Assembly: GCF_006345805.1 (NCBI RefSeq)
Contig: NC_043005.1
Span: forward strand, 105,524,001 to 105,588,000
DNA: 64,000 bases
Direction of reading: 5' to 3'
From: Octopus sinensis
Lineage: Eukaryota
Below, piece after piece: positions 1,151 to 59,059 of this stretch. Position 1 is the first letter of the stretch, and each line of letters opens with the position of its first letter. The notes below the pieces were generated by a model that worked only from the letters and a program-made list of their open reading frames with translations, ran no database searches and was not told where the DNA came from. The position numbers and the translations under genes are program-made.

Positions 1151-1312
1151 GGCGCAGGAGTGGCTGTGTGGTAAGTAGCTTGCTAACCAACCTCATGGTT
1201 CCGGGTTCAGTCCCACTGCGTGGCATCTTGGGCAAGTGTCTTCTGCTATAGCCCCGGGCCGACCAATGCCTTGTGAGTGGATTTGGTAGACGGAAACTGA
1301 AAGAAGCCTGTC

Positions 1313-1358
<46 letters not shown>

Positions 1359-1590
1359 GTATGTGTGTGTTTGTGTGTCTGCGTTTGTCCCCCTAGCATT
1401 GCTTGACAACCGATGCTCGTGTTTTTACGTCCCCGTCACTTAGCGGTTCGGCAAAAAGAGACCGATAGAATAAGTACTGGGCTTACAAAGAATAAGTCAC
1501 GGGGTCGATTTGCTCGACTAAAGGCGGTGCTCCAGCATGGTCGCAGTCAAATGACTGAAACAAGTAAAAGAGTAAAAGAGAGAGAGAGAG
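1151..1590 (+). mobile_element. SINE family A (tRNA-type head, internal microsatellite, LINE-like 3' tail)
   Basis: Head GGCGCAGGAGTGGCTGTGTGGTAAG with B-box-like GGTTCAGTCC, a central (AT)n/(GTAT)n/(GT)n tract, and tail GGCGGTGCTCCAGCATGG..CAGTCAAATGACTGAAACAAGTAAAAGAG. Near-identical copies lie at 27592-27993 and 52600-52976. Confidence 0.9.
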
Positions 1591-2132
1591 TAATTTAAAA
1601 TTTTCCCACAGCATACAATTTCATATGAAGCATTGAGTTTGTGCATTTCTCTGAAGAACTTCTAGAGAAGGAGCATGAGTGACTGCCAGTTTCTAATTCG
1701 ATGAAGAGTTCTCAGAGTATCTTTGTGATAAATGGTCAGATGAGATCTTGCAAATAATGAATCTCTAATACTTTCCTTCTTATATAAATGAAAGAGTTAC
1801 AGCCTAAAATTTGGACATTAGATTCAATACTAGTTTCTTGGCTGCAATTAGAATCTACAAAACATTGTTTTCAATCGTTTTCGAATAACGTGAAAGGGAG
1901 GCAGTGGGGAACACCTTTACAGTGTTGTAGTCCCTGCACTCAATGGTATGGCTTAAGATTGAAGTGGCATGATATGAGGATAGTGAGCTGAGTCTTTCTG
2001 GTGCTGGTAATTCAGTAAGAAAATTTAGTAAAGAAATTTCAAATGTGTTCACACTGTACTTTGATTTAATGAAATACCAGTAAATCGATGTGGTTGAAGA
2101 AAACTTTTGCAAAAACTGTTACTGCTGTATTT

Positions 2133-12239: not shown

Positions 12240-13100
12240 ACTGCTCTCCATGGTAGCTGCGTCAGCTACTCTCACAAGTTATACTGGGAAACAAAAGTAT
12301 CACAAAAATATAAAGTAACCTGAAGGTACCTCAAAACTGCAGAAAGATTCGAACGCAATATACAAGTGGGCTGACGAAAACAACACGCTGCTTCAATGCC
12401 GGCAAGTCTTAAGCACTTAGCTATCGGACGACAGAAGAATTGCAATCAGAAAATGCAGGACTAAGGGGTTTTCTAATCCCAGAGGAAGAGTGGGTGCGTG
12501 ACTTGAGAATCCAAATGAGTGTCGATGCATCGTTACGTGGGCATATTTCTAAGATGGAAACAATGTGTAGGCGACTGATTGTTTGCTTTCAGACATAATT
12601 CAGACTATGTAACAAAGAAACCATATTGCATCTATGGAGAAAATTTGTGCTCAGCAGCCTAGATTACTGCTCCTAATTATGATTATCAAAAACTGTCAAG
12701 TGAACGACAGAACTATATCAAGAAGATTGCCTCAGTACAACAGATGGACTATTGGGAGAGTTTAAAAGAGCTGAAGACGCGAAAGATATGCAATAATATA
12801 TATATATGGAAATCCTGGAAGGTCTAGTATCCAACTTTGTGATTGGAATCTACAGCAATCACTTGATTGAACACCATTATCTCCAAAGTTACAATACAGT
12901 AAGAGCTAAGGATTTGAAGAGCACAGTCTTTCAATACATTGTGAAAAGGCCCCAATAATCTACAAGGTTCAGATGAGCAAATGTTCAAATGGCAGTTGAA
13001 TAACTTTTTATCCCGTGTAACGGATAAGCCTACTTCACGGCAAGACACGCAAAGAAGAGCAGCTCTGTTCAGCTCACTGTGACATCAAGAGTGATCCCAG
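12240..13100 (+). mobile_element. Decayed CR1-like LINE, RT C-terminal half
   Basis: Fragments AIYKWADENN, VRDLRIQMSVDAS, LDYCS, DYWESLKELK and FKWQLNNFLSRVTDKPTSRQ. Homologous to the younger piece at 26011-26390. Confidence 0.8.
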
Positions 13101-25990: not shown

Positions 25991-26010
25991 TATATATATA
26001 TATATATATA

Positions 26011-26390
26011 CTAGAACTGGGCGGCACTGCATAGTGCCAAGGACTCCAAATTTGCCAACAAGATGTAGGACAAGATACTGTGATAGCCTGGGCTTCAGAG
26101 GTCCACAGCTCTTCAATATCCTCCCGAAGGACTCGAGAGACCTGTATGGGGTGGATGCAGATGTCTTTAAAATAAAGCTGGACCTCTTCCTGTCCGGTGT
26201 CCCAGATGAACCAACTTCACGGCAGGAGGTGCAGATGAAGGCAGCTGCATCAAACTCTCTTATGCACCAAATGTCAATTGCTAAAAAGCATTCGTGAAGT
26301 AAAATCATGTAGCAACACCGAAAGGCGGTGCCCCAGCATGGCCACAGCTCATGATCTGAAACTAGATAAAATGAAAAAAATGAATGAAAT
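26011..26390 (+). mobile_element. 5'-truncated CR1-like LINE with intact 3' end
   Basis: Reads RGPQLFNILPKDSRDLYGVDADVFKIKLDLFLSGVPDEP..NSL, then the 3' UTR tail GGCGGTGCCCCAGCATGGCCACAGCTCATGATCTGAAACTAG and an A-rich end. Inserted in (TA)n. Confidence 0.88.
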
Positions 26391-26743
26391 ATATATATAT
26401 AAAGAGAGAGAGGGAGAGAGAGTGTGTGTGTGCACATGTGTGTATTTGGTAGCTGCCATGGAAACATCCGTCACTACTCTGATCTACCTTGACTCACATA
26501 TTCCGAAATTTGGTATTACACAGAAGGAGACTAGTTTATGCCGAAGCAATCACATGCGATTAGAACTCACTATTCGTATCAAGCACAGAGCAAATACGAA
26601 ACTGATATTAGCTGCAATTCAACAACCGAACACCACTATTATTACCTACTAACATAGTCAGTTCAATACAACTATAAGTGGTGTGTGTTTGTGTGTGTGT
26701 TTGCGTGTGTGTAAGCGTGTATGTATGTATAAGTATATGTATA

Positions 26744-28180: not shown

Positions 28181-28244
28181 GGCGGTGCCCCAGCATGGCC
28201 ACAGCTCGTGAGCTGAAACTAGATAAAATAAAATAAAAAATAAA
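28181..28244 (+). mobile_element. Solo CR1-like LINE 3' tail (extreme 5' truncation)
   Basis: GGCGGTGCCCCAGCATGGCCACAGCTCGTGAGCTGAAACTAGATAAAATAAAATAAA, nearly identical to 26324-26372. Confidence 0.85.
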
Positions 28245-58030: not shown

Positions 58031-58179
58031 CACATACATACATAGATTCATACAAACATACATACATACATGCACGCATACACACATATATATATACACA
58101 AACGTATATACATACAAACATACACACATACATGCAAACATACATACAAGCATACATACACACAGACACACGCACAAAC

Positions 58180-58226
<47 letters not shown>

Positions 58227-58387
58227 CATACATACGTACACACATACATACATATACACGCATACACACACATATATATATATACATACATACATACATA
58301 CAAACACACACAAACATACATGCAAACATACCTACATACATACACATGCACATACATACATACATACATACATACATACATACATAC

Positions 58388-58498
58388 GTACTAGCTACGG
58401 CGGTACATATTCTAAAATTGGAACGATACATTGGAAAGATTAGCACGGCTCCTGCGCAAGGATGACACGCAAATTCGTGAAGCGTTCCATATTTTTTT
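58388..58498 (+). pseudogene. U6: Full-length U6 snRNA retrocopy with altered ACAGAGA box
   Basis: GTACTAGCTACGGCGGTACATATTCTAAAATTGGAACGATACATTGGAAAGATTAGCACGGCTCCTGCGCAAGGATGACACGCAAATTCGTGAAGCGTTCCATATTTTTTT. The 3' ~45 nt match canonical metazoan U6. The upstream flank is (TACA)n, so there is no PSE/TATA promoter. Confidence 0.95.
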
Positions 58499-58501
58499 AA
58501 C

Positions 58502-58554
58502 GGCGGTGCACCAGCATGGCCGCAACTCTGAGCTGAAACTAGAAAAAAAAATAA
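58502..58554 (+). mobile_element. CR1-like LINE 3' tail fused to U6
   Basis: GGCGGTGCACCAGCATGGCCGCAACTCTGAGCTGAAACTAGAAAAAAAAATAA, homologous to 26324-26372 and 28181-28244. Confidence 0.88.
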
Positions 58555-59059
58555 TACATACATACATACATACATATACATATACTATGTAGTAGTCTAA
58601 CACTAATGGCGACTGCAATTGTTGGAAAAAGTACGTAATAGCATTAAGTAGAGCGGAATGAATTTCATTCTTCAAACTCGGTTAAAATCGAATCACAACC
58701 CGGGGCAGGCCAGGTACGACAGTTCTGAGTGTCTGCTCACGGAAACTTCAACTTTGAATTAATCATATAATTATATCTGGTTGCAATCAAGGTGGCAATA
58801 ATTGTTATACTGATAACGCTTTATTGAAGTAGAAACACTGACTATAATTGTCTTCTTGTCCCCAGAAAAAAAAGGTTGCCCCTTTCTTAACGACATGTTT
58901 ATTCCGAATAATAGATGTTTCCTTGACTCTCGTTCCAAGTCAGTGGAATCTCCCTGTGGGTCACCTTATCTTCTTCCCAAGAGAATATAACCTCAAAAAT
59001 TTACCTGGAATGGGATTTGTTTACCTTTCTTTGTCATTTATTTTTTATTCGGCGTTGTC

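What the first reader, a model, noticed from the sequence alone, without database searches (positions are those of the whole stretch)
58388..58554. U6 snRNA fused to the 3' recognition tail of a CR1-like LINE: chimeric retrogene or U6-headed SINE
Seen: a complete U6 ending in T7 is joined via AAC to the ~55-nt LINE tail plus an A-rich end, inserted in a (TACA)n tract. Established: U6/L1 chimeras are known in mammals, formed by template switching or ligation of U6 to LINE RNA, and snRNA-headed SINEs exist for U1/U2 in crocodilians. Inference: an equivalent chimera with a non-L1 LINE in a mollusc. If multicopy, it would be a U6-derived SINE family. The tail starts at the same GGCGGTG boundary as the solo tail at 28181.
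Basis: partly seen in the sequence, partly recalled or inferred. Interest (0 to 1): 0.8.

Follow-up and report, generated by a model that had tools for sequence, protein, structure and literature searches.

The report
U6 snRNA–LINE tail chimeric retropseudogene
A dead copy of the U6 spliceosomal RNA was pasted into a microsatellite together with the short 3' "recognition tail" of a LINE retrotransposon in a single reverse-transcription event; it is one of roughly a hundred such accidents in this genome, a kind already known from platypus and lizard, not a new U6-headed SINE family.

Summary
Window 58388-58498 is a full-length U6 (Rfam 89 bits) ending in T7, joined through AAC to a ~50-nt LINE tail plus A-rich end (58502-58554), inside a (TACA)n tract. 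The junction recurs: 46 exact genomic hits against 0 in the control.

It is not an amplifying U6-SINE:
- The U6 part matches the ordinary tandem U6 gene array. All three real U6 gene variants occur with all three tail subtypes.
- Junction bases differ between copies.
- Shared substitutions are CpG transitions only.
- A third of copies have 5'-truncated U6.
- The T-run terminator sits inside the unit, and no promoter is carried.

U6 is also fused to the exact 5' end of full-length SINE RNA (25 exact hits against 0). The tail is a conserved double hairpin at the 3' end of an endonuclease+RT LINE. On its own it is a very abundant "solo tail" (at least about 2x10^4 copies) with the same 5' boundary and the same liking for (TA)n/(TACA)n sites.

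Best reading: the reverse transcriptase copied the tail, ran off its 5' end, and jumped onto a U6 RNA. The closest precedent is the U6-L2/RTE/SINE chimeras of platypus and Anolis (Doucet 2015). So this is a new member of a known kind, of moderate interest.

The parts
58100..58387 (.). Upstream part of the (TACA)n/(CA)n/(TA)n microsatellite that was the insertion target
   Evidence: sequence. Solo tails of the same subtype sit in identical contexts, e.g. L069. Microsatellite flanks are enriched about 6-fold.
58388..58498 (+). Full-length U6 snRNA pseudogene (variant v1, the tandem-array gene), including its T7 tract (58492-58498). The ACAGAGA box is disrupted and there is no upstream promoter.
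   Evidence: Rfam RF00026, 89.1 bits, model 1-105. 6 differences over 110 aligned positions from the array gene, all private to this copy. Array genes have a conserved TATA-containing upstream region that is absent here.
58499..58501 (+). AAC junction bases, templated from the last three bases upstream of the tail in its LINE parent (...GTAGCACAAAAC|GGCGG). C58501 pairs with G58522.
   Evidence: Parent contexts. Linker type tracks tail subtype. The -1 to +21 covariation is U-A in type A and C-G in type C.
58502..58521 (+). Tail hairpin 1: GGC-G-GUGC[ACCA]GCAU-GCC
   Evidence: RNAalifold consensus, 7 pairs kept in 18-19 of 19 sequences. Single-sequence folds.
58523..58535 (+). Tail hairpin 2 (CAACUC U GAGCUG), weakened in this copy by a G>A change relative to the type C consensus CAGCUC
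   Evidence: Two stem pairs show double-sided compensatory changes between tail types, CU/AG versus UC/GA. Fold of this copy versus the consensus.
58536..58554 (+). Conserved AAAC-TAGA spacer and A-rich 3' end (A9TAA), the presumed priming end for target-primed reverse transcription
   Evidence: type C tails end in GAAACTAGA + A(n). Types A and B end in (TAAAA)n/(ATCA)n and (GTAAAAGA)n.
58555..58585 (.). Downstream continuation of the (TACA)n target tract
   Evidence: a 23-nt ATACATAC... match between the two flanks.
28181..28244 (+). Solo tail, type A, starting at the same boundary, with no U6 and no LINE or SINE body
   Evidence: Genome-wide, more than 90% of the first 100 listed type A tails are solo.
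26010..26395 (+). 5'-truncated LINE 3' end: ORF2 C-terminus (stop at 26295-26297), about 25-nt 3' UTR, type A tail. This is the parent kind of element for the tail.
   Evidence: 63% identity to the C-terminus of a 984-aa APE+RT protein, P0001.
1151..1590 (+). Full-length SINE-B: head GGCGCAGGAGTGGCTG..., internal microsatellite, body ...GCTCGACTAAA, type B tail. Its 5' end is the second U6 fusion point in this genome.

Best explanation
The locus is a dead-on-arrival chimeric retropseudogene made in one retrotransposition event by an endonuclease+RT LINE of the 'stringent' type.

Inferred steps. The LINE protein bound its ~40-nt double-hairpin 3' tail, here as a tail-only template or the tail end of a longer RNA. 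It nicked a (TACA)n target and primed cDNA on the A-rich end. It copied the tail to the base of hairpin 1 (leaving AAC), then continued on the 3' U-tract of a U6 snRNA molecule by end-to-end template jumping, and copied U6 to its first nucleotide. The cDNA was then joined to the target.

Shown: the anatomy, the recurrence, the independence of the copies, the LINE origin and conserved structure of the tail, the identical boundary in about 2x10^4 solo tails, and the second fusion point at the 5' end of SINE RNA.

Inferred: the order of events and jumping rather than ligation.

The element has no function. The ACAGAGA box is broken, there is no U6 promoter, and the tail hairpin 2 is mutated.
For: (1) Anatomy: full-length U6 + T7 + AAC + tail + A-rich end, in one orientation, splitting a (TACA)n tract.
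(2) Recurrence: 46 exact U6-end/tail junctions against 0 in the control. In an unbiased sample of U6 3' ends, 26 of 73 non-array copies are joined at the tail boundary and about 16-17 at the SINE-B 5' head. None of the remaining flanks maps to internal SINE or LINE positions. There are 25 exact U6/SINE-head junctions against 0.
(3) Independence: the U6 in this copy is the sequence of the tandem gene array with its own TATA-containing promoter region. The three real gene variants v1, v2 and v3 combine freely with tail types A, B and C. Divergence from the source gene is 0-24 of 107. Junction bases differ (AAC, AAAC, CAAC, CTAAC...). Shared substitutions are CpG transitions, and this copy's changes are private.
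(4) LINE hallmarks: 12 of 33 chimeras have 5'-truncated U6. L036 has a flush 9-bp TSD around U6(91-107)+tail. The others have short TSDs or microsatellite flanks, as in the platypus U6-L2 chimeras (PMC4476161).
(5) The tail is the 3' end of a LINE: ORF2 C-terminus plus short UTR plus tail in the window and in L079, homologous to a 984-aa Exo_endo_phos+RVT_1 protein. The tail folds into two hairpins with covariation.
(6) Solo tails with the same 5' boundary and the same site preference are abundant. Core hits are 12,296 (type A), 1,738 (C) and 60,697 (B), with more than 90%, about 85% and about 10% solo respectively. L069 is a solo type C tail in (TACA)n.
(7) Extra A/T-rich bases not present in either parent occur at both junction classes, as expected for untemplated addition before a template jump.
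Against: For this particular copy a TSD cannot be defined, because both flanks are the same microsatellite, and no orthologous empty site could be examined. Template jumping is not distinguished experimentally from prior RNA ligation. The very sharp boundary (about -2 to -6 relative to GGCGGTG) is unlike the variable L1 truncation points in human U6/L1 chimeras and is not itself explained. Types A and C are mostly solo while type B is mostly attached to its SINE body, so a simple constant 'RT stops here' probability does not fit. All genome counts are lower bounds from near-exact patterns, and only the first 100 rows of each could be inspected.
Confidence: 0.85

Rival explanations
1. RNA ligation first. 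A tail-only RNA fragment with a 5'-OH, produced by a specific cleavage at the base of hairpin 1, is joined by an RtcB-type ligase to U6 ending in a 2',3'-cyclic phosphate. The chimeric RNA is then retrotransposed through its tail, as shown for human U6/L1 (PMC6789731). This is a rival for the joining step only. The locus would still be a chimeric retropseudogene.
For: It would explain the sharp, subtype-independent boundary and the abundance of solo tails with the same 5' end. U6 is by far the commonest non-SINE RNA found in front of tails (9 of 100 T-run-preceded tails; no other small RNA recurs at that level), which fits its special cyclic-phosphate end.
Against: Many junctions carry extra bases that belong to neither partner (ATAAT, CTAAT, ATGGA, CATT...). 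U6 is also fused to the very 5' end of full-length Pol III SINE RNA, an end that should be a tri- or monophosphate and is a poor RtcB substrate (PMC6789731). T-runs of 7-9 exceed the mature U4-5>p end. No known self-cleaving ribozyme matches the tail.
Confidence: 0.2
2. A U6-headed SINE family. A chimeric master copy is transcribed and its RNA is repeatedly retrotransposed through the LINE tail, so the copies are descendants of one fusion.
For: The chimera is multicopy (46 or more) and has the head-plus-LINE-tail layout of a SINE. snRNA-headed SINEs exist for U1 and U2 despite external promoters and internal oligo-T (PMC4494074). Two copies (L003, L005) share nearly the same unusual internal SINE junction.
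Against: U6 heads are the three ordinary gene variants, mixed with three tail subtypes and with SINE heads. Junction bases and T-run lengths differ even within the v1+type C group to which this copy belongs (T6-AAC, T6-AAAC, T7-AAC, T5-CAAC, T4-ATCTAAC). There are no shared derived substitutions other than CpG transitions. Several copies are identical to the source gene. A T5-T9 Pol III terminator lies between head and tail. U6 promoters are upstream of the gene (established knowledge; PMC4494074), and the flanks of the chimeras are unrelated. There are about 100 chimeras against at least 2x10^4 solo tails.
Confidence: 0.05
3. Two separate insertions. A solo tail landed by chance, or by target preference for T/A-rich DNA, immediately 3' of a pre-existing U6 retropseudogene in the microsatellite.
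For: Solo tails do favour (TA)n/(TACA)n tracts. The TSD of this copy is uninformative. L089 (tRNA gene + trailer + T6 + tail) could be read as such an adjacent insertion.
Against: Exact abutment within 0-10 nt recurs at 46 or more loci against 0 in the control. A tail-less U6 could not have been mobilised by a tail-dependent LINE. 5'-truncated U6 fragments occur only with a tail attached, in the same microsatellite on both sides (L038, L055, L058). L036 has one 9-bp TSD around the whole unit.
Confidence: 0.03

Closest known systems
U6-L2 / U6-Mon-1 chimeras of platypus and U6-L2, U6-RTE, U6-AnolisSINE2 chimeras of Anolis (Doucet et al. 2015, PMC4476161)
   Same: U6 is joined by its 3' end to a short 3' piece of a 'stringent' LINE or its partner SINE. 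The U6 is often 5'-truncated. TSDs are small or absent (1-9 bp). There are no poly(A)-only U6 pseudogenes. The authors interpret them as template switching.
   Different: The host is apparently a mollusc rather than a vertebrate (not verified by any tool here). About half of the copies carry full-length U6. The junction is confined to two points (the base of the tail hairpin and the SINE 5' end) rather than described as variable. The same boundary is shared by tens of thousands of solo tails.
Human/mammalian U6/L1 chimeric pseudogenes (Buzdin et al. 2003, PMC169886; Moldovan et al. 2019, PMC6789731)
   Same: Full-length U6 ending in T4-T8 fused head-to-tail to the 3' part of a LINE, inserted as one unit. 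Recurrent independent events.
   Different: L1 is a poly(A)-dependent 'relaxed' LINE with variable L1 truncation points and 6-19-bp TSDs at TT/AAAA sites. Here the partner is a structured tail with a fixed boundary, the targets are microsatellites, and TSDs are short or absent.
SINEU, the U1/U2 snRNA-headed SINEs of crocodilians (Kojima 2015, PMC4494074)
   Same: An snRNA-derived 5' part with LINE-derived 3' sequence, an external promoter problem, and internal oligo-T.
   Different: SINEU are true families with consensus sequences and subfamily structure. The octopus-type U6 chimeras show no descent from a chimeric master.
Chimeric retrogenes of Magnaporthe grisea made by the MGL LINE (Gogvadze et al. 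2007, PMC2104539)
   Same: Evidence outside vertebrates that LINE RTs jump from their own 3' end onto an abundant small non-coding RNA.
   Different: Fungal host, a different small RNA (not U6), a different LINE.

Membership tests
U6 spliceosomal snRNA gene (RF00026) | Sequence and structure match above the Rfam gathering score over the whole model | tested here: met
   89.1 bits against 44, model 1-105 of 105
U6 spliceosomal snRNA gene (RF00026) | Intact catalytic ACAGAGA box | tested here: not met
   ACATTGGAAAGA in place of ACAGAGAAGA. It is a pseudogene.
U6 spliceosomal snRNA gene (RF00026) | Upstream type-3 Pol III promoter (TATA near -30, PSE) | tested here: not met
   Upstream is (TACA)n. 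Real genes (array L009-L028, L001, L006) have a TATA-containing conserved upstream region.
U6/LINE chimeric retropseudogene | U6 3' end with its U-tract joined in the same orientation to the 3' part of a LINE or partner SINE | tested here: met
   The tail is the 3' end of an APE+RT LINE.
U6/LINE chimeric retropseudogene | Many independent events: variable junction bases, different source genes, different partners | tested here: met
U6/LINE chimeric retropseudogene | The whole unit flanked by one target-site duplication (inserted as a unit) | tested here: inconclusive
   For this copy both flanks are (TACA)n. A related copy, L036, has a flush 9-bp TSD. Most others have short TSDs or microsatellite flanks.
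U6/LINE chimeric retropseudogene | 5' truncation of the upstream (U6) part in a fraction of copies | tested here: met
   12 of 33 tail chimeras start at U6 position 40-91. This copy is full length.
SINE (U6-headed) | Copies descend from transcribed master elements: one junction, shared diagnostic substitutions | tested here: not met
   Mixed U6 variants and tail types, variable junctions, only CpG transitions shared
SINE (U6-headed) | A promoter carried within the element, and a transcript able to run through to the tail | tested here: not met
   T5-T9 terminator between head and tail. The U6 promoter is external (PMC4494074) and the flanks are unrelated. Transcription itself is not testable here.
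SINE (U6-headed) | 3' tail shared with a partner LINE | tested here: met
CR1-clade LINE (partner element) | ORF2 with APE endonuclease and RT; 3' UTR hairpin followed by a short simple repeat | tested here: met
   These features are shared with L2, Rex1 and other clades.
CR1-clade LINE (partner element) | Phylogenetic placement of the RT within the CR1 clade | not tested
   No reference LINE set was available.

The most novel reading that the evidence does not exclude
The ~55-nt tail may be a discrete micro-retroposon. A defined tail-only RNA, whose 5' end is set by a specific processing event or by the footprint of the bound LINE protein, would be the main template of this LINE family (at least 2x10^4 solo copies). 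Any Pol III transcript ending in oligo-U that is captured at that end (U6, perhaps pre-tRNA as in L089) becomes mobilisable. On this reading the U6 chimeras are failed attempts at SINE birth. Established SINE families of this genome that carry a T-run immediately before the tail (...ACTAAAAATTTTTCAA|GGCGG; ...GCATTTATTTTAAAT|GG) would be the successful ones. That would make this genome a natural system for watching how SINEs acquire LINE tails.
Probability: 0.3. Interest if true: 0.65.

Novelty: new member of a known kind. Interest (0 to 1): 0.45.

Why it matters
It extends U6 capture by tail-dependent ("stringent") LINEs from a few vertebrates to what appears to be a cephalopod. It does so with an unusually clean signature: only two junction points, the base of the recognition hairpin and the true 5' end of SINE RNA. 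That pattern is what end-to-end template jumping predicts, and it gives a tractable system (about 100 chimeras, some identical to the source gene) to separate jumping from RNA ligation. It also bears on the long-standing proposal that SINEs acquire their LINE tails by such jumps. For genome annotation, these loci should be flagged as U6 pseudogenes, and the solo tails as LINE-derived repeats.

Tried and rejected
After that only the window, 90 loci of 3 kb, and 35-place pattern read-outs were usable.
- Rfam at the gathering threshold (whole window) and at E<=10 on the tail gave no family for the tail. So there is no known self-cleaving ribozyme to explain the boundary.
- An RNase P/minihelix or hammerhead-like reading of the tail was considered and dropped, because the required complementary or core motifs are absent.
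- MAFFT misaligned hairpin 2 of type C. This was redone by hand.
- The automatic TSD search is uninformative in microsatellites and gave a false hit inside the tail (L047).
- A search for other small RNAs in front of tails mostly recovered other SINE families with a T-run before the tail. No second snRNA stood out.
- Clade assignment of the LINE was not possible. Pfam gives only APE+RT and the cluster look-up gave no names.
- Literature searches found no report of U6 chimeras in molluscs and no U6-derived SINE. The library is incomplete, so this is not proof of absence.
- The identity of the host species could not be verified with the tools.

Full report
**What is there.** Rfam finds one RNA gene in the 64-kb window: U6 at 58388-58496 (+), 89.1 bits against a gathering score of 44, covering all 105 model positions. 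Reading the sequence, the U6 ends in T7 (58492-58498). It is followed by AAC (58499-58501) and then by GGCGGTGCACCAGCATGGCCGCAACTCTGAGCTGAAACTAGA (58502-58543) and A9TAA (to 58554). A TACA-type microsatellite lies on both sides. The ACAGAGA box reads ACATTGGAAAGA, so the U6 is a pseudogene. The solo tail at 28181 begins at the same GGCGGTG.

Because that pattern forces the boundary, I also listed what follows every intact U6 3' end (GAAGCGTTCCATATTTTT; 268 hits, 100 listed). Of those 100:
- 27 belong to a tandem U6 gene array.
- 26 are joined within a few bases of GGCGGTG.
- About 16-17 are joined to GGCGCAGGAGTGGCTG.
- About 30 have other flanks. None of these maps to internal positions of the SINE or LINE sequences I hold.

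GGCGCAGGAGTGGCTG is the 5' end of a full-length SINE (SINE-B, window 1151-1590) that ends in the same kind of tail. L029 is U6-ATA-full-length SINE-B. A direct pattern count gives 25 exact U6/SINE-head junctions against 0. So U6 is fused at two preferred points: the true 5' end of SINE RNA and the base of the tail. Two further copies (L003, L005) are joined at one internal SINE position.

**One amplified family or many events?** The U6 sequence in our copy (5' stem GTACTAGCTACGGCGGTAC, ATATTCT) is exactly that of the tandem array at G000:C1:141.83-141.96 Mb, whose units share a TATA-containing upstream region. It is therefore the ordinary expressed U6. Two other real gene variants exist (L001, L006).

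In the 33 tail chimeras I could read, all three variants combine with tail types A, B and C. Mismatches to the source gene range from 0 to 24 of 107. T-runs range from T4 to T9, and junction bases differ even within one variant-and-tail combination. For v1+type C, our class, they are T6-AAC, T6-AAAC, T7-AAC, T5-CAAC and T4-ATCTAAC.

In an alignment of all U6 parts, the only recurrent substitutions are CpG transitions, and the six changes in our copy are private. Twelve of the 33 have 5'-truncated U6. L036 carries a flush 9-bp TSD (AAATAAATT) around U6(91-107)+tail. Other copies have short TSDs or sit in (TA)n/(TACA)n on both sides. This is the profile of repeated, independent LINE-mediated events, not of a SINE descending from a chimeric master. 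A SINE is also mechanistically unlikely: a Pol III terminator lies between head and tail, and U6 promoters are upstream of the gene (PMC4494074), so none is carried.

**What the tail is.** Three subtypes are clear:
- Type A follows ...CATGTAGCAACACCAAAT|.
- Type C (ours) follows ...GTAGCACAAAAC|.
- Type B follows the SINE-B body ...GCTCGACTAAA|.

In the window (26010-26395) and in L079 the A and C parents are the C-terminal end of an ORF (...GPQLFNILPK...VFK.KL...), a short UTR and the tail. The window ORF matches the C-terminus of a 984-aa protein with Exo_endo_phos and RVT_1 domains at 63% identity. The tail is therefore the 3' end of an APE+RT LINE and is shared by several SINE families. 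Whether the LINE is CR1-clade was not testable.

The tail folds into two adjacent hairpins followed by GAAAC and a simple-repeat or A-rich end:
- **Hairpin 1** (GGC-G-GUGC[NNCA]GCAU-GCC) starts exactly at the first G of GGCGGTG. It is lengthened by one pair using the -1 base, which covaries: U-A in type A, C-G in type C.
- **Hairpin 2** has two pairs with double-sided compensatory changes between types.

Consensus tails fold with z = -2.3 to -3.2 against shuffles. Our copy has a G>A change that weakens hairpin 2. So the "linker" AAC is the last three bases of the LINE parent upstream of hairpin 1.

**Solo tails.** Near-exact 21-mer cores give these counts:

| Tail type | Core hits | Solo in the first 100 rows |
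|---|---|---|
| C | 1,738 | about 85% |
| A | 12,296 | more than 90% |
| B | 60,697 | about 10% |

Solo means arbitrary or microsatellite flank, then 2-4 parental bases, then GGCGG. The remaining type B copies are attached to the SINE body. Solo tails therefore number at least about 2x10^4 and share the boundary used in the U6 chimeras. They favour period-2/4 microsatellites: 11-12 of 30 against 5-7% background. L069 is a solo type C tail in (TACA)n, which is our locus without the U6. The U6 chimeras (about 100) are thus a roughly 0.5% side product of tail-only retroposition.

**Mechanism.** The simplest account is target-primed reverse transcription that starts on the tail's 3' end, copies the two hairpins, reaches an RNA 5' end (or the edge of the protein-bound region), and then either joins the target (solo tail) or jumps to the 3' end of another RNA. 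Four things support jumping:
- The two junction classes both correspond to template 5' ends.
- Extra A/T-rich bases belonging to neither partner occur at both classes.
- U6 is fused to the 5' end of a Pol III SINE transcript, which is a poor RtcB substrate (PMC6789731).
- Some T-runs are longer than the mature U6 end.

Prior ligation of U6>p to a 5'-OH tail fragment remains possible, and it would neatly explain the sharp boundary. No known ribozyme matches the tail. I put about 0.6 on jumping and 0.2 on ligation for the joining step. I put 0.85 on the overall reading of a single-event chimeric retropseudogene.

**Comparison with what is known.** Doucet et al. 2015 (PMC4476161) described U6 chimeras with L2 and Mon-1 in platypus (40 copies, mostly 5'-truncated U6 on a short L2 piece, TSDs of 1-9 bp) and with L1, L2, RTE and AnolisSINE2 in Anolis. 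They concluded that template switching to U6 is a general property of LINEs "from birds to mammals". Gogvadze et al. 2007 showed analogous chimeras in a fungus. snRNA-headed SINEs are known for U1 and U2 only (PMC4494074). I found no report for molluscs and no U6-derived SINE. The present case is therefore a new member of a known kind. It differs in host group, in the proportion of full-length U6, and in the strict two-point junction pattern tied to an abundant solo-tail class.

**Limits.** For our copy the TSD is hidden by the microsatellite. No related genome could be searched. Counts come from near-exact patterns and the first 100 rows. The host species and the LINE clade are unverified.

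Noticed in passing
window 28181-28244; genome-wide: Solo tails (~55 nt: two hairpins, GAAAC and a simple repeat, with no body) are a major repeat class. Core hits are 12,296 (type A, more than 90% solo), 1,738 (type C, about 85% solo) and 60,697 (type B, about 10% solo). It is unexplained why types A and C are mostly solo while type B is mostly attached to its SINE body.
   Followed up: partly
L061-L090 (e.g. L062-L064, L069, L075-L078, L082, L083, L087); window 58100-58585: Tails and chimeras insert preferentially into (TA)n and (TACA)n microsatellites: 11-12 of 30 flanks against 5-7% background. The flank often shows the same repeat on both sides.
   Followed up: partly
L089 (G000:C2:200912519 region), tRNA at locus 1552-1624 (-): A complete tRNA-Arg(CCT), a 27-nt trailer ending in T6, then GAC and a type C tail. 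This is either a pre-tRNA/tail chimera (a second kind of Pol III transcript captured) or a tail inserted next to a tRNA gene. No clear TSD.
   Followed up: partly
genome-wide; L008 2040-2075; L084 1480-1514: Several established SINE families carry a T-run immediately before the tail (...ATTCGACTAAAAATTTTTCAA|GGCGGTGCCCC, about 60 of 100 rows...GGGCGCATTTATTTTAAAT|GG). This looks like a relic of a Pol III terminator at the point where the tail was acquired.
   Followed up: no
L036-L059: 5'-truncated U6 parts start preferentially at U6 positions 63-73 (8 of 12). This suggests a reverse-transcription stop in or just 3' of the U6 internal stem-loop or at a modified nucleotide.
   Followed up: no
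L031 and L054: Two chimeras at unrelated sites, with different U6 5' variants (v3-like and v1) and different junctions, share the same 13-nt deletion (GCATGGCCCCTGC) plus a G>A change in U6. This could be a recurrent RT skip or an unrecognised U6 variant.
   Followed up: no
G000:C1:141834633-141960833 (L009-L028): A tandem array of at least 30 U6 genes (units of about 1.1-1.4 kb) with a conserved TATA-containing upstream region and the 3' flank CTTACTCTTTCTACTG. It is the source of the U6 variant in the window.
   Followed up: partly
G000:C14:7253081-7253288; G000:C3:111895032-111896187: Tandemly repeated chimeric units: three copies about 87 nt apart of a U6 3' fragment plus type A tail, and three copies about 560 nt apart of a T-run+AAT+type A tail. 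These look like local duplication after insertion.
   Followed up: no
window 26287-26296 versus U6 positions 85-94: The LINE ORF2 stop region (gcATTCGTGAAGta) shares a 10-nt identity with U6 (aaATTCGTGAAGcg). The expectation by chance is roughly 0.03 for these lengths, so it is probably coincidence.
   Followed up: no
window 12256-13091 (+): A fragment of a second, more distant LINE ORF2 (36-43% identity to P0001 residues 676-974).
   Followed up: no
G000:C1:192676067, C2:60762159, C3:80175912, C3:80537977, C10:7747161: Five dispersed U6 copies share the 3' flank CTGAAAT(N)TTTTTTATA, and three others share AAATCGATCA(A/T)TG. These are either small dispersed gene families or chimeras with other, unidentified partner elements.
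   Followed up: no
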